Shown one piece after another: positions 17,926 through 62,757 of a DNA stretch of 64,000 nucleotides (positions within the stretch are counted from its first letter, which is position 1; each line of letters begins with the position of its first letter). The DNA lies in the IMG/VR virus record IMGVR_UViG_3300023235_000008, positions 124,001-188,000 of that record; one strand, given 5' to 3'. The translations under genes and the position numbers were made by a program. The notes beneath the pieces were generated by a model. It had not been told where the DNA came from. It made no database searches and saw only the letters and a list, made by a program, of their open reading frames with translations.

Positions 17926-18121
17926 TATATTTCCATTCCCATTTACTTCCAAGTTGTTGAAGTTGAAGTTTACACATAGTTCTTGCGTATTTGTTATCCG
18001 TTATCGGAAAGTCACAGTGCGACAAGTCATATGGATTGCCGTCCTCGGGCAAATACTTGCAACTTTCGCAAGACTTTACGCCATCCCATTCCAAGGCTTT
18101 CCAAAACTTATCTTTATTCAT
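17918..18121 (-). CDS. FW-tag microprotein, CxxC/WxW class
   Basis: MNKDKFWKAL…CESC…C…C…WEWKYND. Confidence 0.8.
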   Translation of the reverse strand: MNKDKFWKALEWDGVKSCESCKYLPEDGNPYDLSHCDFPITDNKYARTMCKLQLQQLGSKWEWKYND

Positions 18122-19298
18122 ATCCCATCGCTTTTGCTATGTGTGGATAAATGTCCGCAAAATCTTGCTTGCGTAATCTATCAGTTGCCTTCATATAGTT
18201 ACAAAATACTTTACCATCGCTGCCCGAACCTGCCTCAATGAAGTTAATAAGTTGTTGCCAGTTTTCATTGTATTGTGGCATGATATGCATACAATGATAC
18301 TTAATGTTATCAACCACTAGCCGTTTGCATTCCGGTGTCATATACTGGACATTCATATGCCATGGGTCGTGCAAATAGTTCCAATGGATTGAATCAAACT
18401 TACCCTCTTCTTCTGCCCACATCAATAACTGGTCAAGATAGAATACGTTTTGTATATTTATAGTGAAACAAAGTTGTCTGGTAAAAGTTGTGCTGTTAAT
18501 CCATGCTTTTTTAATAATAAATGAACGCACTTCATCCCATTTGGCACCATACCGTTCGTATTCAAATCGCTCACCAATATTATCAACAGAATATGCAAAC
18601 TCTACACTCTTAAAATCATATAGAAAATCATAATGGTGGACTTGTGTGCCATTAGTATTATAGTGCAACTCAATCGTATTTTTTACTTCGGTAGGAATAT
18701 TTGACAAGAAATCAATATGTTCTTTAATCATAAATGGTTCACCGCCAGTGAACTCAATGTACTTGATTTGTTCTACCTCAGTCATATTAATAAGGTTATC
18801 CCAAAAATGATGATTATCTTCTGGCCAGCGTCCTAGCTGAAGTTGCTTATATGCTAGATGTTCTTTGCCGCCGCCGTCACGTTCCATTTCTTCTTTAGCC
18901 CATTTCGAACTTGACCAAGAACCACAAATACGACATTTTAGATTACATTTGTTTCCAAGTTTCAAATCAAGAAACCACAAGCTATCGGGTTCAATGTCAG
19001 TGTAATCAATCTTATCCATAAGATGTTTTAGGCGAAATTGGGTATTCATACGCTTAGACATTTTGCCAGCAGATTCTTCTTCCCAACATCTCGAACACGT
19101 TTCGGGTTTCTCGCCATTCAAAAACTGTTGGCGTAGGTCTTTCATATAATCAGATTTATATGCGTCTTCGATAGTGTGTTTACGTAGGTCAATCCCCGGC
19201 ACTTCGTCACGAGCAAGACAGCACGGACGGCATCCGCCCATCGGCGTTGTTTCCATACTAATCCACGGTAACGGGCAAATATTTGGTAGTTTATTCAT
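18114..19298 (-). CDS. Radical SAM enzyme with N-terminal twitch/SPASM-like domain
   Basis: CPLPW…PCC…CSRC; CNLKCRIC; GGEPF. Confidence 0.9.
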   Translation of the reverse strand: MNKLPNICPLPWISMETTPMGGCRPCCLARDEVPGIDLRKHTIEDAYKSDYMKDLRQQFLNGEKPETCSRCWEEESAGKMSKRMNTQFRLKHLMDKIDYTDIEPDSLWFLDLKLGNKCNLKCRICGSWSSSKWAKEEMERDGGGKEHLAYKQLQLGRWPEDNHHFWDNLINMTEVEQIKYIEFTGGEPFMIKEHIDFLSNIPTEVKNTIELHYNTNGTQVHHYDFLYDFKSVEFAYSVDNIGERFEYERYGAKWDEVRSFIIKKAWINSTTFTRQLCFTINIQNVFYLDQLLMWAEEEGKFDSIHWNYLHDPWHMNVQYMTPECKRLVVDNIKYHCMHIMPQYNENWQQLINFIEAGSGSDGKVFCNYMKATDRLRKQDFADIYPHIAKAMGYE

Positions 19299-19531
19299 TT
19301 ATTAAGGTATCCCAAAACGCTGCCTTCTTTGATTTCTTCTTGCGGTCTATGTATATTTTTTTCATAAAAAATCTTCCTGCATTCACAACACGCTATTTCT
19401 TGTTCAATAATCATATATGGTTCTGAATCTTTGATTTTGACTTCTTTGGTTTCTCGGTTTACAACGAAACCGGCACCGCACCCACATCGCAACGGATTAC
19501 TTAAAGCATTCCAAAACTCGTCTTTATTTAT
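19295..19531 (-). CDS. FW-tag zinc-ribbon microprotein with ATA at the expected start
   Basis: ATA-NKDEFWNALSNPLRCGCG…CCEC. Confidence 0.65.
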   Translation of the reverse strand: MNKDEFWNALSNPLRCGCGAGFVVNRETKEVKIKDSEPYMIIEQEIACCECRKIFYEKNIHRPQEEIKEGSVLGYLNK

Positions 19532-20838
19532 TTCCAGTCTTTTAATCTCATTAACTCAGGAAACACATCATAAAAGTGTTCATTTCTTAGTGTATCTAGT
19601 TTACCAATCGTTTCGTTAAACTTGGGGATTAAATATGTATTATCTGTCCCATTCATAAAGTTCAATGCCGATTTAAAACCATTTGTCGCACGATGAAAAT
19701 CATCGCTCGGCTCAATGAATGCGATATGTTCATTGTATATTTCTTCGACTTCCTTCTTCATATCCTGTGGCAAAATATCCATACGGTATTCGTCTGGACC
19801 TTGTAGTATATTGACGTTCCAATCCTTGCCACGTACCAATCCAAGTTTAATCCACTCTCGATGAAAATCAGGAATATGATATGCGTTCATAACACTCATT
19901 GTCGAACTAACATAAAAATCCACATCAGGACAAACCCGCATCATTTCCTCACGATTAAGAACAACCTGTTTCCATTTTGTACCATACCGCATAAGCTCGC
20001 CTCGTTCATACGAAGCATCAAGACTTGCTCCAATACTCACACTGTCAAACTCTTTCCACATTTCAAGAACGTTTTCGCTCTTGTATTTCAACTCAGTAAA
20101 GTTAGTATTATATGATAGTTTAACATCATTTCGCCCTTGGCGCAATAGTTCTTTTAACACCTTATAATGTTCTTCCATCATTAGGGGTTCGCCACCAGCA
20201 AAATATACCTCCTGAATATACGGAATATGTGGCAATAGTTGTTCCCACGCATCGGTTTGATATCGACCAGCGTAAGTAACATTTTCCGCATCCTTTGGCA
20301 ACCAGTTATATTTCTTCTTTTCTTTAACCCATTTCGAACTAAAGATATCACCACACGAACGACATGCTAAGTTACATAGATTTGAAAATCGTATGTCATA
20401 ATAGCGTAGTTTAAAATCACCCGTCGTCCCATCGTTATTAATATCAACGTCTTTAATATTATGACCGAATGACTGATTGGCTGTATTGCGCATACTAAAG
20501 AAACCATTGCGTTCTTGTTCGTAGCATTTAGTGCATTCGTCGCATGATTTTTCATTTACCATATTGCTCCGAATGGTATTCATTTTATCATTATGGAAAA
20601 TCTCTTCCATTGTATTATCTCGCATTGAACCAACAGGGTTTTCGTATGTTGCTAGACAACAAGGATAAGCCTTACCATCTGGATATGCGTGTAGGTGTAC
20701 CCATGGCAACATACAAAACGTCTTACTATCCATAAGTAGCTCACGCTCGGTATCGGTTAACTCTTCTATTTTTATGTTAATAGGGGCACGATTACCATAA
20801 TCGTATTTTGTGTAATAATCGTCCTCGTCTTTACTCAT
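19528..20838 (-). CDS. Radical SAM enzyme with N-terminal twitch/SPASM-like domain
   Basis: FCMLPW…PCC…CTKC; CNLACRSC; GGEPL. Confidence 0.9.
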   Translation of the reverse strand: MSKDEDDYYTKYDYGNRAPINIKIEELTDTERELLMDSKTFCMLPWVHLHAYPDGKAYPCCLATYENPVGSMRDNTMEEIFHNDKMNTIRSNMVNEKSCDECTKCYEQERNGFFSMRNTANQSFGHNIKDVDINNDGTTGDFKLRYYDIRFSNLCNLACRSCGDIFSSKWVKEKKKYNWLPKDAENVTYAGRYQTDAWEQLLPHIPYIQEVYFAGGEPLMMEEHYKVLKELLRQGRNDVKLSYNTNFTELKYKSENVLEMWKEFDSVSIGASLDASYERGELMRYGTKWKQVVLNREEMMRVCPDVDFYVSSTMSVMNAYHIPDFHREWIKLGLVRGKDWNVNILQGPDEYRMDILPQDMKKEVEEIYNEHIAFIEPSDDFHRATNGFKSALNFMNGTDNTYLIPKFNETIGKLDTLRNEHFYDVFPELMRLKDWK

Positions 20839-21113
20839 CTAAACTTTCCATTTATTCTAAACTTATAATCATTATACCATTTACTCCCACACCGCTCACA
20901 TGTTGGCTGAAGGGTGCCCATGTCAGGTTGTTTTTGATGCCACGTCCAATCATTCGGGTATTTTGGTTGTGCTTTGTATACAGTATACGGAAAAGTAAAT
21001 ATCGGATGACCGTTTTCGCACTCAGCCGTTTCACCACCATACGCATATACCTTACTATGGTCTATTGACAATGCTTCAATAAAAGATTCTTTGCTTATAG
21101 CGTTTTGTACCAC
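20835..21113 (-). CDS. Tag-variant zinc-ribbon microprotein (start GTG 21113 or ATA 21098)
   Basis: SKESFIEAL…CENGH…CERCG. Confidence 0.65.
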   Translation of the reverse strand: MVQNAISKESFIEALSIDHSKVYAYGGETAECENGHPIFTFPYTVYKAQPKYPNDWTWHQKQPDMGTLQPTCERCGSKWYNDYKFRINGKFR

Positions 21114-22432
21114 GTGACAAGTTCCTCTGGAAATGTTTCTTCAAATAGTTTACCGCGGCGAATGTCATACTGTGTATAAAACTGTTTGAAATCGTGCTGC
21201 CTTGCTTCTACATCAATGGGGGCTGGTTCTCGTAGATAATCAATCAATCGTTCAATGTGATCTATTTCATGTGCGTGTAATAGTTTTGGGTCTTGTTTCA
21301 TTAACCATCCACCAAGGGCTGCACGGCGGGTTGAACGGATTTCTTCGGGAAGAACCAAGCAAGATTGAAAGCTCGGGAATCTAAGTATATTTAGTGTAAA
21401 ACTAGGTTGTTTACCCACAATCCAATGCTTTTGTCTTAACATAATAAGATGGTCAAGCATATCAGTTAGTGTCCACAAACACAATGCATTAACCGTGCAC
21501 ATAACACTGACATCATTGAATGTGCCATCGGCAAGAAGCGCATCCAAGCGTGATGTCCACTGATCGTAATCCAATCCATCACGAATATATTCGGCGTGTG
21601 CGTCTGTCGCTTCGCAACTAGTATACAATGTGCCGAAGTTAATAACATAATCATTGATAAGTCTATTAAATAATACGTCCGAACATCCAAGGTTTGAGTT
21701 CATTGAAATAGGTGGATACTTGAAAACGCTATCAGCACTATTTTTATAATCAGCATAAATCATATCAAGCAGTTTCCAAAAGTCCTGCGACATGGTTGGT
21801 TCACCGCCCGTAATACGCAACTCCTGCAACGATCCCTTTAAGTCGCTTTCCCACCACTTAAAGAACGCATCGACATATTGATTTGGTTCACCTACCTTGA
21901 AAGGTTGTGAAGCAGCATGTGTATGCGTAAAGTGATTGCGTCCGTCAGTTACTAAGCCTTCGTATGGACCGTTTTCTTTGATATCTTTTGCCCACGTTGT
22001 AGAAAACGCAGGGTTACAATACGAACAAGCAAAGTTACAAGTACGATCAAATGATATCTCTAGCGTCTTTAAGTCAACGTCTTGTTGTGGATTTGTTTTG
22101 TATGCAGTAAGGTTTTCCGACCAATCATAAATCTTTGATTTGTATACACGGTCAGGAACAGCATCAGTTTCCATATCCATCACTTTCCAACAGTAGTCGC
22201 AACCTTTAGGACGTTCACCACGCACCATTAACTCACGGTCGTGTTTCTTTTCCTTGGTGTTATGTAATAGCTTTGGATTGTTTACAACATCGTCAGATAT
22301 TTGATGTGCAGGGGGATGGTGACACGATGTAGTTTGACCGCTGCCTAACCATATAGTAGCGTTATACCATTTCGCCGAACAAAAGCTTGGCGATAGTTTA
22401 TCCAATACTTTTTTGTAATCTTTATCGTTCAC
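21095..22432 (-). CDS. Radical SAM enzyme with N-terminal twitch/SPASM-like domain
   Basis: FCSAKW…SCHHP…CDYCW; CNFACSYC; GGEPT. Confidence 0.9.
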   Translation of the reverse strand: MNDKDYKKVLDKLSPSFCSAKWYNATIWLGSGQTTSCHHPPAHQISDDVVNNPKLLHNTKEKKHDRELMVRGERPKGCDYCWKVMDMETDAVPDRVYKSKIYDWSENLTAYKTNPQQDVDLKTLEISFDRTCNFACSYCNPAFSTTWAKDIKENGPYEGLVTDGRNHFTHTHAASQPFKVGEPNQYVDAFFKWWESDLKGSLQELRITGGEPTMSQDFWKLLDMIYADYKNSADSVFKYPPISMNSNLGCSDVLFNRLINDYVINFGTLYTSCEATDAHAEYIRDGLDYDQWTSRLDALLADGTFNDVSVMCTVNALCLWTLTDMLDHLIMLRQKHWIVGKQPSFTLNILRFPSFQSCLVLPEEIRSTRRAALGGWLMKQDPKLLHAHEIDHIERLIDYLREPAPIDVEARQHDFKQFYTQYDIRRGKLFEETFPEELVTWYKTL

Positions 22433-22679
22433 TGAACATTATTCCAATCCGTTTCTGTTCTTTTTTGTATTGTAGAACGCTATGAAAATGGCTTTTCCAC
22501 GATTCTTGTTTTTCAGGATCGCTTACAATCTCGTCACAATCCTTACAAACTTCACATAACTTATAAATCATATACAGCTTTTTTTGTTTGCCTACCGTAA
22601 CTGTTGTGTTGGCGGCTTTGATGAGGATTGTAGGATGAATGCATTTAGTCAAACCATTCCAAAACTGTTCCTTATCCAT
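22422..22679 (-). CDS. FW-tag Cys-containing microprotein
   Basis: MDKEQFWNGLTKCIH…CEVCKDC. Confidence 0.75.
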   Translation of the reverse strand: MDKEQFWNGLTKCIHPTILIKAANTTVTVGKQKKLYMIYKLCEVCKDCDEIVSDPEKQESWKSHFHSVLQYKKEQKRIGIMFSER

Positions 22680-22788
22680 AAGGTTCCCATTCTTCACCAG
22701 TGAAAATCAACAATCCTTTTTCTTCGTCGTGGATTATTTCACCTTCAAATGGCACTACTGGCGGTGGCGAGGGCGTATCATCTGTCAT
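22672..22788 (-). CDS. 38-aa microprotein consisting of one tail-fibre-type motif (not in ORF track)
   Basis: MTDDTPSPPPVVPFEGEIIHDEEKGLLIFTGEEWEPYG; overlaps both neighbours. Confidence 0.65.
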   Translation of the reverse strand: MTDDTPSPPPVVPFEGEIIHDEEKGLLIFTGEEWEPYG

Positions 22789-24142
22789 ATTTGTTGCTCC
22801 TATACATACAATCATCCCAGAACTCAATCATCTCTGGAAACGTTTCTAAGAAGTTAGTGCCCCTACGGTTATCGTGTTCATTGAAGAATCGATAGAAGTT
22901 AACACGTGCTTCATTTAAATCTTTCTCGCCCATAGGAGTTTTCATATGGTCAAGGTTTCTCACCATCTTGGCAGCTTCGTAATCCTTGAATCCATCATAA
23001 CAAGTAGGACAAGACTCTGGACTATTACCTAAGTATTTTACCATATTTTCAAGCTGAAATCTATATGATTCGGGCAATATTTGAATCGATTGCCATACTG
23101 GATCAGTAAGAACTGGGATGTCAAACCACACACGCTGATAATCGTTGCTGTAAATCTTACGAAGACCAAGGATAGCGGTAAACAACTCAGGGAGACTAGT
23201 GATACTAAGGTTATTTAGGGTAATAATAAATGTAACACTATTCCTATGTGGAATGTCGTGTAAGAATGTATTGACGTTATCCCATAAACGATTGAAGTCA
23301 AGCCCGTGTCGAATATACTCAGCCTTTGAACCAAATGCATCCAATGAAACAAACTGCATAAAATGTTCTACATTCTCGCCGTCGCAAATACGTTTCGTAT
23401 AATCCATATACTTGTCAAAGATTTTAGGCTCTACACTAAAGTTGCTCGTTACGTTTAAGTGAAGGTCTGGTTTTGGATTTTCTAAAACATAGTCAAATAC
23501 TTTATAGGTGTTCGGGTCCATTAATGGTTCACCTCCTGTCATTCTGAAATGACGCAATGTTGGATACATTGCTGCCCAATCTTCCCAAAACTTTTCTACA
23601 TATGGATTATGTTCACGTTGTGGGATTGGGCGACGGTCACCAGCAAAATGCGCAGGATGGTTGTGCGGGGTAATGGTTGGCCACGCACCTTGTGATTTTG
23701 TTTCTGCCATCCATGATGAACTATATTGTGGCGAACAATAGCTACACTTTAAGTTACAGGCGTTATTAAAGTTCACCTCAACATACGATGGATTGACAAC
23801 GCCGCCCGCAACAACCTTATCAAAGTTATCCATTGCCCAAGGCTCACCACTACGATAGTGACGGTCTGACAGATTTCCTTGGTCTTCCATCTTCCAGCAA
23901 TAATCACAACCAGTAGGTCGCTTACCCGCAACCATCATTTGCTTTTGGATATCTTTTTCGGATGTTTCGTTTAACGTTTCACGTTTCAAATCCATCTTGT
24001 GCGGTGGCGGATGATAACATGAGTTAGTATGACCTGTTGTTAGGTGAAGGCTGGTTTGTAACCATTTAGCCAAGCAGAATGTTTCGGAAACATCGTCCAG
24101 TTTCTTCTTGGCGTGTAATGCATCGTCGTTATAGTTACTCAC
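22778..24142 (-). CDS. Radical SAM enzyme with N-terminal twitch/SPASM-like domain
   Basis: FCLAKW…SCYHP…CDYCW; CNLKCSYC; GGEPL. Confidence 0.9.
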   Translation of the reverse strand: MSNYNDDALHAKKKLDDVSETFCLAKWLQTSLHLTTGHTNSCYHPPPHKMDLKRETLNETSEKDIQKQMMVAGKRPTGCDYCWKMEDQGNLSDRHYRSGEPWAMDNFDKVVAGGVVNPSYVEVNFNNACNLKCSYCSPQYSSSWMAETKSQGAWPTITPHNHPAHFAGDRRPIPQREHNPYVEKFWEDWAAMYPTLRHFRMTGGEPLMDPNTYKVFDYVLENPKPDLHLNVTSNFSVEPKIFDKYMDYTKRICDGENVEHFMQFVSLDAFGSKAEYIRHGLDFNRLWDNVNTFLHDIPHRNSVTFIITLNNLSITSLPELFTAILGLRKIYSNDYQRVWFDIPVLTDPVWQSIQILPESYRFQLENMVKYLGNSPESCPTCYDGFKDYEAAKMVRNLDHMKTPMGEKDLNEARVNFYRFFNEHDNRRGTNFLETFPEMIEFWDDCMYRSNKYDR

Positions 24143-25053
24143 CAGTTCTCCCGCTTTCTGATTATATCAATCTCGGTTGTCATAAAGTCTTCCTGTACGT
24201 GATTCTTTTTATAGAAGTGTTTAAAAAACTTTGATTGGTCACTATCATATCGCACCAATGGGATATTCAATCGTGACTTAACAATATCAATGGTTGCTTT
24301 GATATATCTATCATCGTTATTATTCGCATAACCATCGTATTGCATTTTCAATACGTCGAAGTCTTGAACGCCCGTATAATCCCAATCGGTTAGCATAACG
24401 GCGTGTAATCCGAATAAAGCACCATCCATTGCTGAAACACCAAACTCGGCGTCGGCTCCTGTATTCAACCATACCATAAGATTATCAAGGTTCTTATCGT
24501 GAACCATTTGCTCAAACTCTGGTAGTGTAGGACGAACACCTTTATTCAGACACATCTTTACGCCTTCACGAAACCCTGCTCTCCAAGCATTGAACTCACT
24601 TTGATTGGGATGCGTAGTTCCGTAAACATTCCACATAGCGTGATAGTTAGGGTCATAGCAAAACTCTACGTTGTTTTCATCTGACCCATCACTATTTTCG
24701 TGCGTTCGCATATTCATAATGAAATCACGATGCCAAATACTAATACCGCCGTTGCCGTATCTCAATCCATTTATTGCATTGATTGCCTTCCAACGATATG
24801 CACTTGGTACATCAGGTGCTTCAAATGTTTGATTAAAGAAGTTTGGATCAGGCATATGGTCACCATCAATCAACACAAACCATTCGGTTTCACTGATTTC
24901 AGCTGCCGCTTTGTGTGCGGAATCACTGCCTTTTACACCATCGACACGATTTGCCCATGGCACCATATTCTGGATTTCTACCCAAAACTCTTCTTTTTTT
25001 GGTTCGTCAAATGTTAGATAGACCACATCAAGGTCTGCAACATCAATCTTCAT
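24139..25053 (-). CDS. GT-A fold glycosyltransferase-like protein
   Basis: GVKGSDSAHKAAA, DxD motif IDGD, NGLRYGNGG, AWRAGFREGVKM. Confidence 0.7.
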   Translation of the reverse strand: MKIDVADLDVVYLTFDEPKKEEFWVEIQNMVPWANRVDGVKGSDSAHKAAAEISETEWFVLIDGDHMPDPNFFNQTFEAPDVPSAYRWKAINAINGLRYGNGGISIWHRDFIMNMRTHENSDGSDENNVEFCYDPNYHAMWNVYGTTHPNQSEFNAWRAGFREGVKMCLNKGVRPTLPEFEQMVHDKNLDNLMVWLNTGADAEFGVSAMDGALFGLHAVMLTDWDYTGVQDFDVLKMQYDGYANNNDDRYIKATIDIVKSRLNIPLVRYDSDQSKFFKHFYKKNHVQEDFMTTEIDIIRKRENW

Positions 25054-25222
25054 ATTCTACCCAAAAGTCTTTTTCAAAATCAAACGTATATTGAATGTCG
25101 GTAGTAGTATCTCGGTATACGTGAATACCAATGCCGATATTCTTGTCTGCCTGTAAATAACTCTTATTAGGCTGCGGTGGCATTTGTAATACTTGCCAAA
25201 ACTTATCTCTGCTTATGTTCAA
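25043..25222 (-). CDS. FW-tag microprotein (PPQP class)
   Basis: SRDKFWQVLQMPPQP…FEKDFWVE; TTG start assumed. Confidence 0.7.
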   Translation of the reverse strand: MNISRDKFWQVLQMPPQPNKSYLQADKNIGIGIHVYRDTTTDIQYTFDFEKDFWVEYED

Positions 25223-25400
25223 TCCATTTATCCTTTTCATAATTAAAAACCCATTTTAAACCCGTCTGTATATCTACCCAAATAGTAACCATAGGAAGTT
25301 CTTTATTATATATACCGAGCTGATATACCGTCAACATACTTTCTTCGCTCGGCTGTGGGGGTTCGCCTAACCCTTCCCAAAAATCTTCTTTACTTAACAC
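25203..25400 (-). CDS. FW-tag microprotein (PPQP class)
   Basis: GTG-LSKEDFWEGLGEPPQP…YEKDKWIE. Confidence 0.7.
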   Translation of the reverse strand: MLSKEDFWEGLGEPPQPSEESMLTVYQLGIYNKELPMVTIWVDIQTGLKWVFNYEKDKWIEHKQR

Positions 25401-25539
25401 AAATCCATTCTTTTCCATTCCAAATCTCCAATCCACCTGTGTCGTTGTTATAAAATACGGAACCCACTGGGCGGGTCGGCGGTGGTGCCTTCAATGCTTC
25501 CCAAAAATCTTCTTTATTCAAAGTCTTTTCGGTATTCAT
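25390..25539 (-). CDS. FW-tag microprotein carrying a tail-fibre-type motif
   Basis: LNKEDFWEALKAPPPTRPVGSVFYNNDTGGLEIWNGKEW. Confidence 0.75.
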   Translation of the reverse strand: MNTEKTLNKEDFWEALKAPPPTRPVGSVFYNNDTGGLEIWNGKEWICVK

Positions 25540-25861
25540 AGAAGTCTTCGGTGCCGATGAAGTATGGGTTATTTTTTCTAGTGCCATACATTCCAGTCTC
25601 CGATTTGACAAGGTTGTATGTTTGTGGCTTAGATGGCGTTTTAATCTCGCCATCAATGATTTTATTATCACTTCTTATACTTTCCCATACGCTGCGCTCA
25701 ACGATAATGAAATCACCTTCGGGTGGTTCAACATTGTATTCAATAGCGACTTGTTTAAGGATATCGCCAGTTTCCTTGTTATAGTATAACCTATATTCAG
25801 GCGTAAAGTCAATAACTGGTTCAGCATCAAATAGAACTAATCCTTCTAAAAAGTTACTCAA
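25514..25861 (-). CDS. Hypothetical protein (EYRLYYNKETG motif)
   Basis: ORF in operon; TTG start at 25861 assumed from overlap. Confidence 0.65.
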   Translation of the reverse strand: MSNFLEGLVLFDAEPVIDFTPEYRLYYNKETGDILKQVAIEYNVEPPEGDFIIVERSVWESIRSDNKIIDGEIKTPSKPQTYNLVKSETGMYGTRKNNPYFIGTEDFYEYRKDFE

Positions 25862-25997
25862 AATCTTCCTCTCTATATTCTTCTCCAAATATCTCTTTTA
25901 ATCCCGGCATTAACTGTCGCAATACAGCAGCACGGCGAATAGCCTCTTTACTTTTCACTGGATTTTTTAAAGTTTTCCAAAACTCATGTTTATTCAT
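25854..25997 (-). CDS. FW-tag microprotein carrying a capsid-N-terminus-like peptide (47 aa, not in ORF track)
   Basis: MNKHEFWKTLKNPVKSKEAIRRAAVLRQLMPGLKEIFGEEYREEDFE. Confidence 0.75.
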   Translation of the reverse strand: MNKHEFWKTLKNPVKSKEAIRRAAVLRQLMPGLKEIFGEEYREEDFE

Positions 25998-26185
25998 TTC
26001 TTGTTCCATTCCCAGTGCTTACGATCTCCCGTTGCACTCACTAATATACTCACACAATCCACGTGTCCCGGCGCTGTTGCGTGTTTACAACTAAAACACG
26101 TTTTATCGTTTCCTAATAGAAACCAAAACTAGTTATCGTTTCCTAATAGAAACCAAAACTCTTCTTTACTACAATCGTTGTTCGT
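25994..26185 (-). pseudogene. Inactivated FW-tag CxxC/WxW microgene
   Basis: ACG-NNDCSKEEFWFLLGNDN*FWFLLGNDKTCFSCKH…C…WEWNKK; ACG at the start position and a TAG created by a duplication. Confidence 0.75.
26103..26160. repeat. 28-bp exact tandem duplication (period 30)
   Basis: ttatcgtttcctaatagaaaccaaaact at 26103-26130 and 26133-26160. Confidence 0.95.
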
Positions 26186-27020
26186 ATCGTCTGATGAGTT
26201 CGTCACTGCAAAAATCCTTCTGTTGATAATGGAATGGAAACATTTGATAGTATCCTCCCACAATAAAATCCATATCTTCCGTCAACGCCCAACTCACCAT
26301 ATCCGTCCACTGATTGGAATGAAAGCCCTGTAGTTCTGGCTTCATATGAACAAAGGTCGGTTGAACACCCGGCATATAACAACGTTCTTCACCAATCATC
26401 AATGCAGCTAACGCATATACTTCATCGGTTGTTGGGCGTTCAATACGGCAGTTCTTTAAAATATTATCCCGATACATTGACCAGTTCTCAAATATTTCTT
26501 TAGCCGCCATAAAAAAGTCAGCCATTGTCTTTGAATATCTGAAATAACTAAAACCATTATATGTATTTAGAAGGCTGTTATCATCGAATACTTTTCGGAA
26601 TCGGCGGTCAGTAATAAGGTTGCCACGATAATCAACTACGTCCGTAGTTATACAAATATCCTTGGCTCTCATATGATCCCACCAATGTGAAACATCACGT
26701 GTGAAAATCATATCAACATCAAGGTTAACTGTCTCTTTAAATGGCGTAGCGTGGTACAGTTTCCAAGCATTAGCCAACTTCCATTCATCGCCAGCAGCGG
26801 CGTCACCGAAAGGTATATCAACAATGTAATCAAATACTTTGCGATGTTTATCGGTGATTTGCGCTTTAGTCTTTTCATCAACGGCGATAGCATACTTGTT
26901 AATGCGTTGTGTTGCCTTGATAGAAAGGGCTTGTAAATATGCTATACGCAAGTAATCAACATCGCTGTTCTGAACAAAAGCAAAATATCCTTGCTGGTCT
27001 TTGAACTGTTCTTTATTCAT
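26169..27020 (-). CDS. GT8-like glycosyltransferase
   Basis: TPFKETVNLDVDMIF (DxD), TTDEVYALA, FVHMK, FHYQQK. Confidence 0.75.
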   Translation of the reverse strand: MNKEQFKDQQGYFAFVQNSDVDYLRIAYLQALSIKATQRINKYAIAVDEKTKAQITDKHRKVFDYIVDIPFGDAAAGDEWKLANAWKLYHATPFKETVNLDVDMIFTRDVSHWWDHMRAKDICITTDVVDYRGNLITDRRFRKVFDDNSLLNTYNGFSYFRYSKTMADFFMAAKEIFENWSMYRDNILKNCRIERPTTDEVYALAALMIGEERCYMPGVQPTFVHMKPELQGFHSNQWTDMVSWALTEDMDFIVGGYYQMFPFHYQQKDFCSDELIRRYEQRL

Positions 27021-27216
27021 TGTTCCATTCCCATTTATCATTGCCGCCAGCTTGACGTTGATCTACCATACCGCATCTAGTGCATCTATCGCACACGTCA
27101 AGATCATTGTAGTCCGCATCCCTCCCGATAATATGCAAAGTATCTTCCCATTTACAGTTGCCGCATACTCTTTCAGCAGGTTCACATAAAGTTTTCCAAA
27201 ACTCCTGTTTATTCAT
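27013..27216 (-). CDS. FW-tag microprotein, CxxC/WxW class
   Basis: MNKQEFWKTLCEP…CGNC…CDRCTRC…WEWNNE. Confidence 0.8.
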   Translation of the reverse strand: MNKQEFWKTLCEPAERVCGNCKWEDTLHIIGRDADYNDLDVCDRCTRCGMVDQRQAGGNDKWEWNNE

Positions 27217-27424
27217 TTTCACCATCCCAATGCCAATGGTCAGCTGCTCGTCTGATTTCCCGCGGGGGTATACCCGATATAGCACGAACGCAAGTATACT
27301 TAACGTGTAGACTACATTCCATGCCAAGGCTAGGTCCAGCGTCCATCATATGCGAACAGTTATTACACGTATGTGTCGATGGTTCACGCAGTGTGTCCCA
27401 AAACTTTTCTTTATCTTTATTCAT
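27209..27424 (-). CDS. FW-tag microprotein, CxxC/WxW class
   Basis: MNKDKEKFWDTLREP…CNNC…C…C…WHWDGENE. Confidence 0.8.
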   Translation of the reverse strand: MNKDKEKFWDTLREPSTHTCNNCSHMMDAGPSLGMECSLHVKYTCVRAISGIPPREIRRAADHWHWDGENE

Positions 27425-27632
27425 ATTTTCCATTCCATTCATATATACTATAATGACGGACGTATGTGTAATCGCCGTTTTCTTTTTCTCGTTTTAACGC
27501 CATCATAGCATCATTAAAGTTACAGGAAAAACAAGGTGACGGTGCATTTTTTGATTTTCCTTCATGAATACAAGTGTTACAACTCGGCTTTGGGCTTTTT
27601 AATGTTTCCCAAAACTTTTCTTTATCGTTCAT
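27417..27632 (-). CDS. FW-tag microprotein, CxxC/WxW class
   Basis: MNDKEKFWETLKSP…CNTC…CFSC…YEWNGKYE. Confidence 0.8.
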   Translation of the reverse strand: MNDKEKFWETLKSPKPSCNTCIHEGKSKNAPSPCFSCNFNDAMMALKREKENGDYTYVRHYSIYEWNGKYE

Positions 27633-27819
27633 CGACACCATTCCATTCCCAATAATCTTCAGTAATAAAGAAACCTTCAGTAAAGAAACGAAACCTACGA
27701 TGCTTAATACAATCTGCGTCCAGTGAACACCCTTGGTCTACCAAATGAATACAGTTTCGGCAGTTATGGTGTGTTGGTTCACGCAATGCTTTCCAAAACT
27801 TTTCTTTATCTTTATTCAT
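27622..27819 (-). CDS. FW-tag microprotein, CxxC/WxW class
   Basis: MNKDKEKFWKALREP…CRNC…C…C…WEWNGVDER. Confidence 0.8.
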   Translation of the reverse strand: MNKDKEKFWKALREPTHHNCRNCIHLVDQGCSLDADCIKHRRFRFFTEGFFITEDYWEWNGVDER

Positions 27820-27825
27820 ATAAGA

Positions 27826-28086
27826 TTATGGAAAGACAGGCAGGGGTTCATCGTCGTCGGTGTCGTCTTTGCCATTCCATTTCCAATAACTGTATTCGCC
27901 GTGCTGTTCACTCACGTGTGCGCTTTTACAACGACCACAAAATGCACTACCATTCACATTACCAAAATCGTGATACGAATATCTTTCGGGAGAATAGAAA
28001 CCGGGACGTGTACAAGTACCACATGATTTTGCAGGTGTTTTTAAATCTTGCCAGAACTTTTCTTTATCATCGAGGTTTTTATACAT
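27826..28086 (-). CDS. FW-tag microprotein, CxxC/WxW class
   Basis: DDKEKFWQDLKTP…CGTC…CGRC…WKWNGK. Confidence 0.8.
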   Translation of the reverse strand: MYKNLDDKEKFWQDLKTPAKSCGTCTRPGFYSPERYSYHDFGNVNGSAFCGRCKSAHVSEQHGEYSYWKWNGKDDTDDDEPLPVFP

Positions 28087-28088
28087 TA

Positions 28089-28970
28089 TTATTTTTTCTT
28101 TCCGGTGCCTGATAACTGCGTCGGTATATATGGACAGTAATAAAATCCTTCATCCATCACTTCCGTTTTACCACGTAACCCATCCCAAAACAGTTTCTTT
28201 CTATTAAGAATATCAATCTGTTTTATAAGCGAAGGTTTATTCATAACGTGTAAATCAAGACCATTTACTTTGGTTTGATATTCCTTGCCATTATTATCAT
28301 ATTCAATGACGACCGTGCCATCCTGCCTAATATCTACCACTTCTTCTTGTGTTCCGACCGAAGCCAATGGAAACGTGAAATGGTTTTCTGTATCATTATA
28401 TCCCGAAAGCAACTGTAATGCAATACTTAATGCAAAATCATTTCGATATGGGGTGGGTCTGAAGTTGAATAAATGCCCGTAATAATGATAGTTTTGGCGA
28501 ACTTCTTGCATCATATCAAATACCGACTTGGAAAACTCAGTCTTTTTAAAATAGATACACGTTGCCCAACGCATAGGAAAACTTGTCTTGCTCATCATTC
28601 TATCAGATGCAAATGTATTTGTGCCCGTAACGTCATATACCTTATCGGCGCATTGAAACTCATGCGCTGAACCGAAATATTTCTTCAAGTTATCTGACAT
28701 AATCAAATAGTCAGCATCAAGTAATAATGTTTCATCATACGGCGAAAGGGAATATGCGGTCATGCGATCCGTATTATGCCAATCCACTTGTTCATACGTA
28801 TTATCACGCCATATAAATGTTCGACTGTTAGCGTTTGTCGGATTTCCAGTGATAATCGTGGTCGGAATATTCAAATGATGAAGTATTAGCTGGCGATTAA
28901 ACTCGGCAATCTTTTCATAATCAATCTGATCATTATTGTAAGCGAAGATTAATGCGCCCTTTGTTGTCAT
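28089..28970 (-). CDS. GT8-like glycosyltransferase with a fused FW-tag/capsid-like C-terminal tail
   Basis: SPYDETLLLDADY (DxD), YRNDFALSIA, DLHVMNK; tail RKKLFWDGLRGKTEVMDEGFYYCPYIPTQL. Confidence 0.75.
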   Translation of the reverse strand: MTTKGALIFAYNNDQIDYEKIAEFNRQLILHHLNIPTTIITGNPTNANSRTFIWRDNTYEQVDWHNTDRMTAYSLSPYDETLLLDADYLIMSDNLKKYFGSAHEFQCADKVYDVTGTNTFASDRMMSKTSFPMRWATCIYFKKTEFSKSVFDMMQEVRQNYHYYGHLFNFRPTPYRNDFALSIALQLLSGYNDTENHFTFPLASVGTQEEVVDIRQDGTVVIEYDNNGKEYQTKVNGLDLHVMNKPSLIKQIDILNRKKLFWDGLRGKTEVMDEGFYYCPYIPTQLSGTGKKK

Positions 28971-29191
28971 TGTTTATGCTCAATCATAGATTTATGATAT
29001 TTGTGAGACATATTGAAAAAGAATAAATCCTTTTCACTCTTGAACTTTAAATAATACATTCCGCCCCAATGACCTTCAATATCAAATGACCATTTAAAAC
29101 GATCAAACGTTTGAAGGTTCACAAGCGTTATGTGCCACTCGTCTATATCGTTAAGGGCTGAAAAGAACTCAAGTTTATGCCATTTGCTCAT
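28967..29191 (-). CDS. Microprotein with C-terminal FKSEKDLFFF module
   Basis: ATGA-coupled at both ends. Confidence 0.65.
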   Translation of the reverse strand: MSKWHKLEFFSALNDIDEWHITLVNLQTFDRFKWSFDIEGHWGGMYYLKFKSEKDLFFFNMSHKYHKSMIEHKQ

Positions 29192-29490
29192 TTAGGAAAG
29201 TTCCTTAAAATGTTCGCCATATCTTTAATCGTGTCGTGTTTTTCTTTTGCCTCTACTTCTTCGGGACGAATGATACGATAGGTTTCAAGCTGAATACGAT
29301 AATATTCTAAGACTTCACTGTTTGAATATCGCCCCGAATAGTCGTAACCATCGGGGTCCAGCTTTTCAAGTTCGGCAATATGCTTTAGAATATTTTCTTT
29401 TGCTCGTTCTTCAATCAACGAATAAGGCGGTGGCAATGGACACTGTAATGCATTCCAGAACTCTTCTTTAGATAAATCATCTTCAATCAT
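29188..29490 (-). CDS. FW-tag microprotein, helical payload
   Basis: LSKEEFWNALQCP. Confidence 0.7.
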   Translation of the reverse strand: MIEDDLSKEEFWNALQCPLPPPYSLIEERAKENILKHIAELEKLDPDGYDYSGRYSNSEVLEYYRIQLETYRIIRPEEVEAKEKHDTIKDMANILRNFPK

Positions 29491-29822
29491 AGTTGGTCAG
29501 TCTTTCGAATCTTACGTAGTTGTTCGTATTCGTTATGCCAATCGTTCATTACTTCATTGTATTTTGTGATTAAACCATGAAGAAAATGGTGGACATCATC
29601 TATTTTGATTGGGTTGTTGTACGAATCTTTTAGAAAATATTCATCTGGGTAGGTTCCAGTATATTCATCAAACCGCATTAATGTCTCAGCGAATGATATC
29701 AACTCAGGGGTGACTTTGAATAAGCCGCCATTATACGCAAGCGTAAGAGCTTGTTCTGCTCTTTCCGCTGCGGTTTGTTTTAATACTTTATGATCTAGAT
29801 GTTTCTTAGCAATACTTTCCAT
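29487..29822 (-). CDS. Hypothetical protein, first gene after a consensus promoter
   Basis: YNGGLFKVTPELISF, DSYNNPIKI. Confidence 0.75.
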   Translation of the reverse strand: MESIAKKHLDHKVLKQTAAERAEQALTLAYNGGLFKVTPELISFAETLMRFDEYTGTYPDEYFLKDSYNNPIKIDDVHHFLHGLITKYNEVMNDWHNEYEQLRKIRKTDQL

Positions 29823-29827: not shown

Positions 29828-29856
29828 ATTATATCACGTATTGGAATATATGTCAA
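29828..29856 (-). promoter_or_regulatory. Perfect sigma70 promoter
   Basis: TTGACA-N17-TATAAT with extended TG; ATG only 5 nt downstream. Confidence 0.85.
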
Positions 29857-30837: not shown

Positions 30838-32169
30838 TTAGTTTACAGTAACGAAGGCTTCAATATTTCCATCAGCGCCATCTTCTAGTGCACGTCCAAC
30901 CACATTGAATGCAGTTGCTTCACCCGCCTGTGCGGCACGTGCAACGCCATTACCAGCAGAAACCAAACGGTCACCTTTACGAACTTGTCCAACTACACAT
31001 ACTGGGCAACGTCCTGTTAACGCTACGGCTGTTCCGCCTTCTAATCCAGCGTTCATAAGGTGGGCTGGGTTTGTTGAAACAACACCAAATACCGTATCTG
31101 AAAGTTCTTCATTCGCTAATGTAATCTCGTCAATGCCGCCGAGAGCAACCAATGTTCCCGGAGCATATACTGAATCAGCGGCGAAGTTTTCCGCAACGTC
31201 GGCGTATTGTGCCTGTGTTGATGTTCCGTTAAATGTCGTCGCATAAATCGTAGCGAATACATTACCAGAAGCACCAATGTTATGTGTATTTGTTGTTCCC
31301 GGCAAGATTGCCGAGGTAGCACCGTCAATAAGTGCAACAGTAGTGTTAACACCGCCGTCATTAATATTGAACTTGAGGTCACCATCTAGTGTCGTGTTAC
31401 GAACTGTTACATCCGATCCAGCAACACCAATCGTTAAATCACTGTCTGCGCCGATAGTAATACCGCTATCATTTAGAACACCAAATGTGCCCGATGTGGT
31501 ATCAGCTTCGTCAGAACGTAAAAACTGCGTTGAGTTGATTGTGTCTAATGTGTCTGCGTTTGATACGGTTCCGATGAACTGTGCACCAGCAACTGTCGTG
31601 CTTAGATTGTAACCCGGCTTAACCGTAGCAAATCCTGAGATAGCAACCTGTGGAGTGAATTCGCTATCTTTAGAAATGATTGCTACAATAGCATCAGATA
31701 CAAACATCTTAACAACAACGTGGTCCGATGCAAGGGAGTCGGTAATAGTATCAATGACTGGTCCAGACTGACCCGTGCCTGTTGTAAACGCTGGTCCAAT
31801 AAGTGTGAATGACGTGCCGTTATAAACTTTCAACTGGCTGTTCGTCGTATCCCACCAAAGGTCACCAGTAACAACTGGCGTTGGCTCAGTTGCAGATGAT
31901 GTTGAACTTGAAATCGTTTTCCAAGCCGTTCCGGTGTAAACTTGCATCAAACTTGATGTAGTATTCCAGAATAACTGACCCGCAATAGGTGCACTTGGTG
32001 CTGATGTATTCGCAAAGTTTTCAAGAAGCTTAACGAAATCTTCGTTTAGAATCTCCCCATAACCTGCGTAGTTCTTACCGATAAGTGTAATATCAGTCGT
32101 TGTATCAATAGTACCGTCTGCGACTGTAGTTAGCACGGCACCTGTTGTTTTATTTATTGTGTAGGCGAT
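30838..32169 (-). CDS. Tail fibre/baseplate-associated protein with apparent ATC start
   Basis: GGAGA SD 6 nt before ATC-AYTINKTTG; LIGKNYAGYGE, LLENFA, GQLFWN/GDLWWD repeats, AQYADVAE, VALTGRCPV. Confidence 0.8.
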   Translation of the reverse strand: MAYTINKTTGAVLTTVADGTIDTTTDITLIGKNYAGYGEILNEDFVKLLENFANTSAPSAPIAGQLFWNTTSSLMQVYTGTAWKTISSSTSSATEPTPVVTGDLWWDTTNSQLKVYNGTSFTLIGPAFTTGTGQSGPVIDTITDSLASDHVVVKMFVSDAIVAIISKDSEFTPQVAISGFATVKPGYNLSTTVAGAQFIGTVSNADTLDTINSTQFLRSDEADTTSGTFGVLNDSGITIGADSDLTIGVAGSDVTVRNTTLDGDLKFNINDGGVNTTVALIDGATSAILPGTTNTHNIGASGNVFATIYATTFNGTSTQAQYADVAENFAADSVYAPGTLVALGGIDEITLANEELSDTVFGVVSTNPAHLMNAGLEGGTAVALTGRCPVCVVGQVRKGDRLVSAGNGVARAAQAGEATAFNVVGRALEDGADGNIEAFVTVN

Positions 32170-53656: not shown

Positions 53657-53677
53657 TATTATGATATTATATAAATA
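53643..53677 (+). promoter_or_regulatory. Overlapping sigma70-type and late promoters
   Basis: TTGACA-N16-TATTAT and TATAAATA (53670-53677). Confidence 0.7.
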
Positions 53678-53697
53678 TCAAACATTGGAGAAGAACT

Positions 53698-61416: not shown

Positions 61417-61435
61417 CAGAATACATATAGAGAGA

Positions 61436-61658: not shown

Positions 61659-61667
61659 AGATATTTA

Positions 61668-61833: not shown

Positions 61834-61841
61834 AAAGTTTA

Positions 61842-62729: not shown

Positions 62730-62757
62730 ATTTTATTTAACAGACTAATTCAAATAA

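What the first reader, a model, noticed from the sequence alone, without database searches (positions are those of the whole stretch)
25854..25997. FW tag fused to a peptide resembling another phage's major capsid N-terminus
Seen: the payload is AIRRAAVLRQLMPGLKEIFGEEY. Recalled, not searched: a widespread group of aquatic phage major capsid proteins (often annotated Mu gpT-like) begins roughly AISRAQLLKELLPGLNALFGLEY, which aligns without gaps at about half the positions. Inference: a captured capsid fragment from an unrelated phage, possibly poisoning a competitor's head assembly or titrating a capsid-sensing immune protein.
Basis: partly seen in the sequence, partly recalled or inferred. 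Interest (0 to 1): 0.8.

Follow-up and report, generated by a model that had tools for sequence, protein, structure and literature searches.

The report
Tagged mimic of rival capsid N-arm
A 47-residue gene of a salt-lake jumbo phage joins the phage's own family tag to a close copy of the most conserved part (the N-terminal arm) of the head protein of unrelated small phages living in the same lake; it may be a decoy that disturbs their head assembly, but this is not proven.

Summary
The ORF at 25854-25997 (- strand, 47 aa) is the family's FW tag (residues 1-13), a 5-residue linker, then a payload (19-47). The payload aligns without gaps to residues 2-31 of the major capsid proteins of HTVC023P-type podophages.

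Statistics are intermediate. Pairwise database-wide searches stay at noise level (tblastn E 0.2-3; phmmer finds nothing in 1.84 billion proteins). Family profiles single the ORF out:
- full-length capsid profile: the only hit among 7,184 peptides, E 1e-4;
- N-arm profile: 30.8 bits, against a maximum of 17.7 in a million shuffles.

A second large capsid subfamily found here (N-terminus MAAISRANELKQLLPGLNALFGEEY) matches 17 of 29 payload residues.

Supporting context:
- codon usage is typical of this phage's genes;
- the tag is demonstrably portable;
- such a podophage is held in the same sequencing runs;
- another phage lineage carries a selected small ORF built on the same N-arm.

I put relatedness to the capsid N-arm at about 0.65. 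A decoy function against rival head assembly is inference, about 0.3-0.35. The immune-titration idea is unlikely. The ORF is an orphan with no polymorphism data.

The parts
25854..25997 (-). The ORF: 47 codons plus TAA stop (P0001). It consists of tag, linker and capsid-arm look-alike.
   Evidence: Codon usage is 0.39 bits/codon in frame, against 0.41+/-0.16 for true frames and -0.88+/-0.43 for wrong frames of this phage. The sequence is identical in contigs of two other runs.
25959..25997 (-). FW tag, residues 1-13 (MNKHEFWKTLKNP).
   Evidence: The motif is shared with more than 35 paralogs. The DNA is 31/32 identical to the tag of the paralog at 27187-27218. Predicted helix at residues 3-10.
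25944..25958 (-). Linker, residues 14-18 (VKSKE).
   Evidence: It lies outside both the tag consensus and the capsid alignment.
25857..25943 (-). Payload, residues 19-47. A gap-free look-alike of residues 2-31 of HTVC023P-type major capsid proteins (the N-arm).
   Evidence: No similarity to any other part or frame of the phage DNA held.
25998..26009 (-). Possible 4-codon N-terminal extension (MEQE) if translation starts at the first ATG.
   Evidence: The family consensus and the gene call in the public collection favour the start at 25997.
25994..26173 (-). Upstream neighbour: an FW-family gene broken by a perfect 30-bp tandem duplication (26103-26160) whose junction creates an in-frame TAG. 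Its last codons (..HWEWNKK, TGA) overlap the start of the ORF.
   Evidence: The duplication is also present in contigs of runs X6 and X8. The two pieces were read apart, never through the stop.
25514..25861 (-). Downstream neighbour (about 115 aa, no known family). Its likely TTG start at 25861 overlaps the ORF's TAA (TTGAGTAA), the same junction form as in the FW genes.
29828..29856 (-). Perfect sigma-70-type promoter match (TTGACA-17-TATAAT with TG) at the head of the - strand gene array that contains the ORF. Context only; no evidence of use.

Best explanation
The ORF is a real, translated, orphan member of a large phage-specific family of small proteins. These proteins share only a portable 13-residue N-terminal helix, the FW tag.

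In this member the usual zinc-ribbon-like body is replaced by a 29-residue peptide. That peptide descends from, or has been shaped to imitate, the N-terminal arm (residues 2-31) of the major capsid protein of HTVC023P-type podophages, which live in the same salt lake. The arm is the most conserved block of that capsid family, so it presumably docks onto a conserved partner during head assembly.

Made free in a co-infected cell, the look-alike would occupy that partner and lower the rival's yield of heads: a dominant-negative decoy used in competition between phages.

Shown: the ORF, the tag family, the gap-free resemblance and its statistics, coding-type codon usage, both phages in the same sequencing runs, and portability of the tag.

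Inferred: common origin or mimicry (about 0.65), any binding, a shared host, and the decoy effect (about 0.3-0.35 overall). What the tag itself does is unknown. It could be a packaging signal, a handle for the neighbouring radical SAM or glycosyltransferase-like enzymes, or something else.
For: Specific resemblance:
- 5 of 6 tblastn hits are capsid N-termini.
- hhalign aligns ORF 19-43 with capsid 2-26, probability 80%.
- N-arm HMM scores are 21.7 bits (common type), 30.8 (both subfamilies) and 36.6 (subfamily B). The next best of 2,367 window peptides scores about 5 bits.
- A million composition-matched shuffles stay at or below 17.7 bits (19.9 for the subfamily-B model), with the expected tail slope.
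- The full-length capsid HMM hits this ORF alone among 7,184 peptides, at HMM positions 2-27.
- The match covers the whole payload and starts at capsid residue 2.

The target block is special. Capsids that are only 55-62% identical overall keep the arm nearly invariant, even when they were fished with patterns from elsewhere in the protein.

A large second subfamily removes two mismatches (Q11 and E22), giving 17/29 identities.

Real gene: codon usage, overlapping start/stop junctions in a tight array, and identical sequence in independent runs.

Portable tag: the FW ORF at 51575-51868 carries a domain that stands untagged as ORF117 of Ralstonia phage RP13 (tblastn E 7e-7, phrog_17597 E 3e-8).

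Precedent: in another phage lineage (L234, L292, L298) a 110-aa ORF consists of the same capsid arm plus 85 unrelated residues.
- It lies between exonuclease/DNA polymerase and an SNF2 helicase.
- It is homologous to the HTVC023P capsid N-terminus (E 1e-4).
- It is under purifying selection (pN/pS 0.27).

Opportunity: an HTVC023P-type phage contig (L016) is held by the same salt-lake runs X1, X2 and X4-X9 as the jumbo phage.

General knowledge: in phage 80alpha the scaffold's C-terminal helix docks on the capsid N-arm helix, and the satellite protein CpmB competes there (PMC5644958).
Against: - Pairwise statistics are at noise level (E 0.2-3).
- No capsid reaches E<=1e-3 in the 1.84-billion-protein phmmer search.
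- Neither Pfam nor PHROGs links the ORF to capsids.
- With only the first, unbiased N-arm profile (P about 1e-8) and a generous count of possible conserved blocks, a chance match somewhere in the window is not excluded.
- Subfamily B was found with a pattern that required one payload feature (acidic residue at position 22).
- Three positions that are invariant or nearly so among the common-type capsids aligned differ: K10 is R, N17 is K, L19 is I.
- No DNA-level trace of capture (about 50% identity).
- No ortholog or polymorphism exists to test selection.
- The host of the jumbo phage is unknown, so co-infection is not shown.
- The partner of the arm is not identified. The gene just upstream of the capsid does not read like a helical scaffold by its consensus sequence (my reading, no structure prediction was run).
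- The upstream neighbour is freshly broken, so the locus may be decaying.
Confidence: 0.42

Rival explanations
1. Chance look-alike. The ORF is an ordinary orphan member of the fast-evolving FW family. Its short tail is a generic amphipathic helix-Pro-Gly-helix that happens to resemble the capsid arm. Whatever it does is what the family does, and has nothing to do with capsids.
For: - Database-wide pairwise E-values are 0.2-3, with one unrelated hit of equal score.
- phmmer, Pfam, PHROGs, PDB and the Atlas give nothing.
- The family shows many unrelated tails.
Against: - Profile scores lie 13-17 bits above the best of a million shuffles.
- It is the only hit of the full-length capsid profile among 7,184 peptides.
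- The alignment is anchored at capsid residue 2 and fills the entire payload.
- It improves in a second natural subfamily.
- An independent lineage reuses the same arm.
Confidence: 0.3
2. Truly capsid-derived but functionless. It would be a neutral chimera left by recombination in a decaying part of the array, translated or not, with no role.
For: - The gene just upstream was broken by a perfect, hence recent, 30-bp duplication.
- The ORF is an orphan found in one phage only.
- FW 5' ends are near-identical at the DNA level (31/32), which invites recombination.
Against: - Codon usage of the payload alone (0.445 bits/codon) is fully that of this phage's genes, which needs long residence in frame.
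- The frame is open to exactly the end of the arm-like stretch.
- The overlapping junctions with both neighbours are intact.
Confidence: 0.15
3. Substrate of the neighbouring enzymes. The FW tag is a leader recognised by the N-terminal-twitch radical SAM paralogs (or the glycosyltransferase-like proteins), as in ribosomal peptide natural products, and the payload is a core peptide to be modified. This does not exclude the capsid resemblance.
For: - Five N_Twi_rSAM paralogs (NF033640, E 1e-77 to 4e-117) each alternate with one tagged or tag-like small gene in the window.
- The same alternation is seen in an independent phage contig, L188.
- The pattern is a conserved short N-terminus with a hypervariable remainder.
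Against: - This ORF has no Cys and lacks the family's C-terminal WEW[DN]G.
- It is not next to a radical SAM gene; the nearest ends 1.7 kb downstream.
- No leader-binding domain or protease was looked for or found.
- Arrays of up to five FW genes occur without an enzyme between them.
Confidence: 0.1
4. Immune decoy or trigger. The peptide titrates, or sets off, a bacterial defence protein that senses this capsid type.
For: From general knowledge, capsid proteins or fragments of them are known triggers of some defences (T4 Gol peptide and Lit; CapRel). No tool result supports it here.
Against: - The jumbo phage belongs to the Rak2/Atu_ph07 group. If its own head is T4-like, as I assume from general knowledge (not tested here), masking a sensor of a foreign capsid gives it no protection.
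- Triggering an abortive system would kill its own infection.
- No defence gene is nearby. The PADLOC library was not searched, so this rests on the Pfam and PHROG results for the neighbours.
Confidence: 0.03

Closest known systems
T4 internal proteins with their capsid targeting sequence (CTS)
   Same: A set of otherwise unrelated, fast-evolving small phage proteins that share only a short N-terminal tag (PMC3012670). This is the closest known logic for 'one tag, many payloads', and it occurs in a phage group distantly related to this jumbo phage through T4-like baseplate genes.
   Different: No sequence relation to the T4 tag was tested. The L/I-x-E protease site that follows the T4 tag (from my own knowledge) is absent here (L-K-N-P) and present in only about a quarter of the FW tags. 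Packaging into the head is untested.
Satellite proteins that subvert helper capsid assembly (SaPI1 CpmB, SaPIbov5 Ccm, P4 Sid)
   Same: One mobile element interferes with another's head assembly through the capsid/scaffold interface. CpmB competes with the scaffold at the capsid N-arm (PMC5644958). Ccm is a homolog of the helper's capsid protein (PMC8569155, abstract).
   Different: Those elements redirect assembly for their own packaging and are encoded by satellites. Here a lytic jumbo phage with an unrelated head would carry only the 29-residue arm. It would imitate the capsid side rather than the scaffold side, and the presumed aim is exclusion, not piracy. No homology to these proteins.
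HTVC023P-type major capsid proteins (PF25209 Phage_capsid_4; weak PF10124 Mu gpT)
   Same: Residues 19-47 of the ORF align without gaps to residues 2-31: 13-15 of 23, or 17 of 29, identical, including A-I, R, L, PGL, FG and EY.
   Different: The ORF has 47 residues against about 305 and no HK97 fold. It is not a capsid protein. The arm sits behind a foreign tag instead of at the N-terminus.
N-arm fusion ORFs of the L234 phage lineage
   Same: A small non-structural ORF that reuses the arm of the same capsid family, is kept by selection, and sits in a phage with a different replication module.
   Different: There the arm is at the native N-terminal position, about 50 capsid-derived residues are kept, 60-85 unrelated residues follow, and a second ORF keeps the capsid C-terminus. 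There is no FW tag. Whether that phage's own capsid is of this type is unknown.
Leader-core precursor peptides of radical SAM natural-product pathways
   Same: A conserved short N-terminus and a variable remainder, with genes interleaved with radical SAM paralogs.
   Different: The bodies are 50-90 residues long and predicted to fold. The enzymes belong to an uncharacterised subfamily with the twitch domain at the N-terminus. This particular ORF lacks Cys and is not next to an enzyme of that kind.

Membership tests
HTVC023P-type major capsid protein (PF25209) | HK97-fold body of about 300 residues matching the family profile beyond the N-terminus | tested here: not met
   The ORF has 47 aa. 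The full-length capsid HMM matches only positions 2-27. No Pfam hit.
HTVC023P-type major capsid protein (PF25209) | N-arm block A-I-x-R-x-x-x-L-K-x-L-x-P-G-L-N-A-L-F-G-x-E-Y starting at residue 2 | tested here: met
   13-15 of 23 identical with no gap. HMM 21.7-36.6 bits and hhalign probability 80%. K10, N17 and L19 are replaced by R, K and I.
FW-tag family of this phage | N-terminal M-N-K-x-x-F-W-x-x-L-x-x-P, predicted helix | tested here: met
   MNKHEFWKTLKNP. The tag DNA is 31/32 identical to that of the paralog at 27187-27218.
FW-tag family of this phage | Start codon overlapping the stop of the upstream gene (NTGAATAA-type junction) | tested here: met
   The ATG at 25997 overlaps the TGA of the upstream frame (AAATGAATAAA), and the ORF's own TAA overlaps the next TTG.
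FW-tag family of this phage | Four conserved Cys (CxxC...C...C) and C-terminal W-E-W-[DN]-G, as in the majority type | tested here: not met
   No Cys and no WEW. The ORF belongs to the minority with other payloads.
T4-type internal proteins (CTS-tagged) | Short N-terminal tag shared by otherwise unrelated proteins of one phage | tested here: met
   At least six unrelated payload types lie behind the same tag. One of them is a homolog of an untagged protein of phage RP13.
T4-type internal proteins (CTS-tagged) | Prohead-protease site (L/I-x-E) at the end of the tag | tested here: not met
   The ORF has L-K-N-P. Glu stands at that place in only about 10 of 38 tags.
T4-type internal proteins (CTS-tagged) | Presence in the virion and injection with the DNA | not testable with these tools
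   Needs virion proteomics.
Radical SAM-modified precursor peptides | Precursor gene adjacent to its maturase | tested here: inconclusive
   True for five family members and in L188. This ORF is flanked instead by a broken FW gene, a 290-aa phrog_1903-like gene and a 115-aa ORF.
Radical SAM-modified precursor peptides | Modifiable residues (usually Cys) in the core, and a leader-binding domain in the enzyme | tested here: not met
   No Cys in the payload. A leader-binding domain was not searched for specifically; NCBIfam names only the N_Twi_rSAM subfamily.
Satellite capsid-size or capsid-shape redirectors (CpmB, Ccm, Sid) | Sequence or fold relation to those proteins, and encoded by a satellite that is packaged by the target phage | tested here: not met
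   No Pfam, PHROG or PDB hit. The ORF is encoded in a 230-kb jumbo phage with its own baseplate and tail genes.

The most novel reading that the evidence does not exclude
Free copies of a rival's capsid N-arm are a recurrent weapon between phages. On this reading, at least two unrelated lineages have independently turned the near-invariant arm of the very abundant HTVC023P-type capsids into small proteins that poison head assembly across that whole group: this jumbo phage and the L234-type phage. In the jumbo phage the FW tag would be a delivery or processing signal, for example packaging into the head and injection with the DNA. The decoy would then be one of some forty tagged effectors.
Probability: 0.17. 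Interest if true: 0.85.

Novelty: new variant of a known kind. Interest (0 to 1): 0.62.

Why it matters
Interference with another element's head assembly is known from satellites that pirate their helper phage. It is not known as a weapon of one lytic phage against unrelated phages, and not in the form of a bare capsid arm.

If real, it would show that the most conserved docking element of a capsid is also its weak point. [quoted passage not shown] It would also make competition between phages in natural waters testable with a 47-residue peptide.

The surrounding FW family is a separate open problem that this ORF helps to frame. It has more than 35 tagged small proteins interleaved with radical SAM paralogs.

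Tried and rejected
- phmmer of the ORF against 1.84 billion representatives found only the ORF itself and P0002, a translated tandem repeat whose 17 weak matches add up; this is an artefact.
- The word-indexed search of 5.8 billion proteins found only the ORF itself.
- Pfam, PHROGs, PDB sequences and the ESM Atlas gave nothing for the ORF. A weak phrog_12106 hit (E 0.13-0.26) is unrelated to capsids: capsid N-termini do not hit it.
- The payload is not a frameshifted or reversed remnant of a paralog. There is no blastn or tblastx match beyond the tag anywhere in the phage DNA held.
- DNA-level identity to capsid 5' ends is about 49-55%, so there is no trace of recent capture.
- Reads and contigs of four runs show the ORF identical in two of them. 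A relative diverged by about 16% does not reach the ORF, so there is no polymorphism and no dN/dS.
- An exact-peptide scan for a closer donor (PGL[KR..][ED][ILFM]FG[ED]EY) in IMG/VR found only the ORF itself.
- 116 loci from bacterial and archaeal genome bins with the arm motif all read as ordinary capsid genes, complete or cut. None is an arm-only ORF.
- The roughly 190-aa gene upstream of the capsid was examined as a candidate scaffold partner. Its consensus does not read as helical and its C-terminus is not especially conserved, so the partner stays unknown.
- The structure model of the Cys-rich FW family (pLDDT 75) has no PDB fold match.
- A prohead-protease site in the tag was considered and dropped, because Glu is not conserved there.

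Full report
WHAT IS THERE

The window is part of IMGVR_UViG_3300023235_000008, a 230-kb contig. It comes from a salt-lake metagenome. The phage is a jumbo phage distantly related to Atu_ph07, SCTP-2 and GAP32: its baseplate wedge protein is 36% identical to theirs.

On the - strand, 25854..26009 is open for 51 codons. The start that fits the gene family is the second ATG, at 25997. It gives a 47-residue product made of a tag (MNKHEFWKTLKNP), a linker (VKSKE) and a payload (AIRRAAVLRQLMPGLKEIFGEEYREEDFE). This is also how the gene is called in the public protein collection (P0001).

The ATG overlaps the TGA of the upstream reading frame. The ORF's own TAA overlaps a TTG that probably starts the next gene.

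Codon usage in frame is 0.39 bits per codon. True frames of this phage's long genes give 0.41+/-0.16 and wrong frames give -0.88+/-0.43. None of 6,000 wrong-frame windows reaches the ORF's value, and the payload alone scores 0.445.

Contigs assembled from two other runs carry the ORF without a single difference. It is therefore a real coding sequence of this phage and not an assembly chimera.

THE TAG

About 20 small ORFs in the window begin with M-N-K-[DE]-[KE]-F-W-x-[AT]-L-x-x-P. The count exceeds 35 when other parts of the contig are included.

Most members have four conserved Cys, hypervariable loops and a C-terminal W-E-W-[DN]-G. A model with pLDDT 75 shows the tag as a helix followed by a beta-hairpin, and it has no PDB fold match. 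The family is not in Pfam or PHROGs.

Single relatives occur on a few other phage contigs.

The tag is portable. The FW ORF at 51575-51868 (+) carries a domain that stands alone, untagged, as the 79-aa ORF117 of Ralstonia phage RP13 (tblastn E 7e-7; phrog_17597 E 3e-8).

At least six unrelated payload types follow the tag. The L codon of the tag varies among synonymous codons, so conservation acts on the protein.

THE CAPSID RESEMBLANCE

tblastn finds it at 65-96% identity at residues 2-24 of annotated major capsid proteins of Planktothrix phage Pag-Yong1, Pelagibacter phages HTVC023P and HTVC027P, DSL-LC04, 023Pt_psg01 and Roseobacter phages CRP-901/902. These proteins hit PF25209 and, weakly, PF10124.

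The family is very large. More than 8,000 clusters at 90% identity were scored, hundreds of IMG/VR contigs carry it, and it turns up in bins of many aquatic taxa. [quoted passage not shown]

The first 24 residues are the most conserved block of these proteins. They stay nearly invariant in capsids that are only 55-62% identical overall, including capsids fished with patterns taken from elsewhere in the protein.

HOW STRONG IS THE MATCH

Pairwise and database-wide it is weak.
- tblastn of the ORF against 2.3 Gb of phage DNA gives six hits at E<10. Five are these capsid N-termini, but at E 0.2-3.
- phmmer against 1.84 billion proteins lists no capsid at E<=1e-3.

With profiles it is much stronger, because the identities fall on the invariant columns.
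- An HMM of 83 distinct N-termini scores the ORF at 21.7 bits. The next best of all 2,367 stop-to-stop peptides of the window scores 4.5 bits.
- hhalign against 44 diverse full-length capsids aligns ORF 19-43 with capsid 2-26, at probability 80% and E 1.5e-5.
- A scan for PGLxxxFG[ED]EY uncovered a second large subfamily. Its N-terminus is MAAISRANELKQLLPGLNALFGEEY and it is 62% identical to the first over the full length. It matches the payload at 15 of 23 residues, or 17 of 29 to the ORF's last residue (37.7 bits by blastp).
- The HMM of both subfamilies gives 30.8 bits, and subfamily B alone gives 36.6.
- One million shuffles of the ORF reach at most 17.7 bits (19.9 for the B model). The tail slope is 0.70 per bit, as theory expects. 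Extrapolated P is 1e-8 (first model) to 3e-11 (combined).
- The full-length capsid HMM, run on 7,184 peptides from every part of this phage and its relatives that I hold, hits this ORF alone, at HMM positions 2-27, E 1.1e-4.

What these numbers mean depends on how many conserved blocks one counts as possible targets.
- As one profile in a library of about 40,000, the ORF would get E of about 6e-4.
- Subfamily B was found with a pattern conditioned on one payload residue. Only the match at Q11 is independent of that.

Three features are not in these numbers. The alignment starts at capsid residue 2, it fills the whole payload, and it targets the family's most conserved block. I put relatedness, by descent or mimicry, at about 0.65.

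INDEPENDENT SUPPORT

First, a precedent. Three IMG/VR contigs (L234, L292, L298; two diverged variants) carry a 110-aa ORF that begins MAISRQQIVKELLPGLNKLFGDEY and then continues with unrelated sequence.
- It is followed by a 111-aa ORF that begins with the capsid's C-terminal motif (KFKTTERYSFGWSDPRGIF).
- Both lie between exonuclease/DNA polymerase genes and an SNF2 helicase.
- The polymerase is closest (33%) to those of Rhizobium and Pseudomonas podophages. No HTVC023P-type phage appears among the 12 records listed of 30.
- The 110-aa ORF hits the HTVC023P capsid N-terminus at E 1e-4.
- It evolves under purifying selection between the two variants: pN/pS 0.27, with the arm part nearly identical even at silent sites.

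So the arm of this capsid family has been reused in a small non-structural protein at least once elsewhere.

Second, opportunity. An HTVC023P-type contig (L016) is held by the same salt-lake runs (X1, X2, X4-X9) that hold the jumbo phage. Local GC contents are similar, 38% against 39-40%. Neither fact shows a shared host.

CONTEXT OF THE LOCUS

The ORF lies in a long - strand array that runs from a perfect sigma-70-type promoter match at 29856-29828 down to about 14.7 kb.

The array holds FW genes, three proteins of about 290-305 aa (two hit phrog_1903, unknown function; they look glycosyltransferase-like to me), a carbamoyltransferase, and five paralogs of N-terminal-twitch radical SAM proteins (NF033640). 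Each radical SAM gene is followed by one tagged or tag-like small gene. The same alternation occurs in an independent phage contig (L188).

The FW gene just upstream of the ORF is broken. A perfect 30-bp tandem duplication (26103-26160) creates an in-frame TAG. The duplication is also present in other runs. I read its two pieces separately.

HOW IT MOST LIKELY WORKS

An arm kept this constant across an enormous family presumably docks on a conserved partner.

In other HK97-fold phages the N-arm helix is where the scaffold's C-terminal helix binds. A satellite protein (CpmB) competes at that very site (PMC5644958).

A free arm made by the jumbo phage in a co-infected cell would be the mirror image of that. 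It would take up the partner and starve the rival's capsid protein of it. This step is inference; nothing here tests binding or effect.

The model of the ORF is a tag helix at residues 3-10, a loop, and one long helix at 17-37 (pLDDT 70). It is compatible with this reading but says little.

If the jumbo phage's own head is of a different kind, as I assume from its Rak2/Atu_ph07 affinity (general knowledge, its capsid gene was not examined), it gains nothing from masking a sensor of a foreign capsid.

What the tag adds is open. [quoted passage not shown] However, the protease site expected after such a tag is not conserved here. The link with radical SAM genes suggests the alternative that the tag is a handle for modification.

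RIVALS

- Chance resemblance (0.30).
- Capsid-derived but functionless debris in a decaying locus (0.15). The codon usage and the intact junctions argue against it.
- Enzyme substrate (0.10, not exclusive of the capsid resemblance).
- Immune decoy or trigger (0.03).

NOVELTY

The ORF is not a capsid protein and not a member of any described family. It would work like the satellite proteins that subvert capsid assembly, but from the opposite side of the interface and for exclusion rather than piracy. I rate it a new variant of a known kind, unproven.

DEAD ENDS

These are listed under Tried and rejected.

Noticed in passing
window 14738-29496 (- strand); also 51533-51871 and 53675-54034 (+); L174, L179, L181 (other parts of the same contig): A multigene family of more than 35 small proteins with the shared N-terminus MNK..FW..L..P. 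Most have CxxC...C...C, hypervariable loops and a C-terminal WEW[DN]G. It is absent from Pfam and PHROGs and has no PDB fold match. Single relatives occur on a few other phage contigs.
   Followed up: partly
window 16011-24142 (- strand); L188 2098-12618: Five paralogs of N-terminal-twitch radical SAM proteins (NF033640), each followed by one tagged or tag-like small gene. The same alternation is seen in an independent phage contig (SRR29660417). It looks like enzyme-substrate pairs, a possible phage pathway for modified small proteins.
   Followed up: partly
window 26103-26160: A perfect 30-bp tandem duplication inside an FW gene. It repeats FWFLLGND and creates an in-frame TAG at the junction. 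It is present in contigs of other runs as well, so it is a real and recent gene break.
   Followed up: yes
window, all FW gene starts (e.g. 27403-27424, 25506-25530, 18106-18121): A recurrent junction: the start NTG-AAT-AAA of the FW gene contains the TAA stop of the gene before it (8-nt overlap). This holds behind other FW genes and behind radical SAM genes. The 115-aa gene after the ORF uses the same form (TTGAGTAA). It suggests coupled translation along the array.
   Followed up: partly
L234 1340-2004 (-), L292, L298: In another phage lineage two adjacent ORFs of about 110 aa keep the N-terminal (about 50 aa) and C-terminal (about 20 aa) ends of an HTVC023P-type capsid gene, each fused to unrelated sequence. 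They lie between replication genes. pN/pS is 0.27 and 0.60 between the two variants, and the arm part is almost identical even at silent sites.
   Followed up: partly
window 51575-51868 (+); L189 1525-1764: An FW-tagged ORF whose body is homologous to the untagged 79-aa ORF117 of Ralstonia phage RP13 and to positions 179-229 of phrog_17597. This is direct evidence that the tag is added to pre-existing domains.
   Followed up: yes
L190-L309 (IMG/VR): A large second subfamily of the capsid family, with N-terminus MAAISRANELKQLLPGLNALFGEEY. It was not picked up by the recalled-peptide search of cultured phages; the family was not searched for there systematically. Variants with NAIFGEEY also exist.
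   Followed up: partly
window 32956-46059 (- strand): A single ORF of 4,367 aa next to the baseplate wedge gene (46059-49550) and a tail-fibre-like gene (30838-32136). Not examined.
   Followed up: no
window 61342-63692 (+): A cluster of four tRNA genes (Pro-TGG, Tyr-GTA, Glu-TTC, Phe-GAA).
   Followed up: no
window 11290-12912 (- strand) and 24139-25053, 26169-27041, 28089-28970: A NodU/CmcH-like carbamoyltransferase (phrog_1601, E 1e-89) and three proteins of about 290-305 aa within the same array (two hit phrog_1903, unknown function; DxD-like motifs by eye). The 304-aa one has a clear homolog in L188.
   Followed up: no
L006-L085, gene just upstream of the capsid gene: A conserved protein of about 190 aa beginning MANSATPFGLRPVG.. 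It does not read like a helical scaffold and belongs to phrog_37556 (unknown function). Its role in the head module of HTVC023P-type phages is open.
   Followed up: partly
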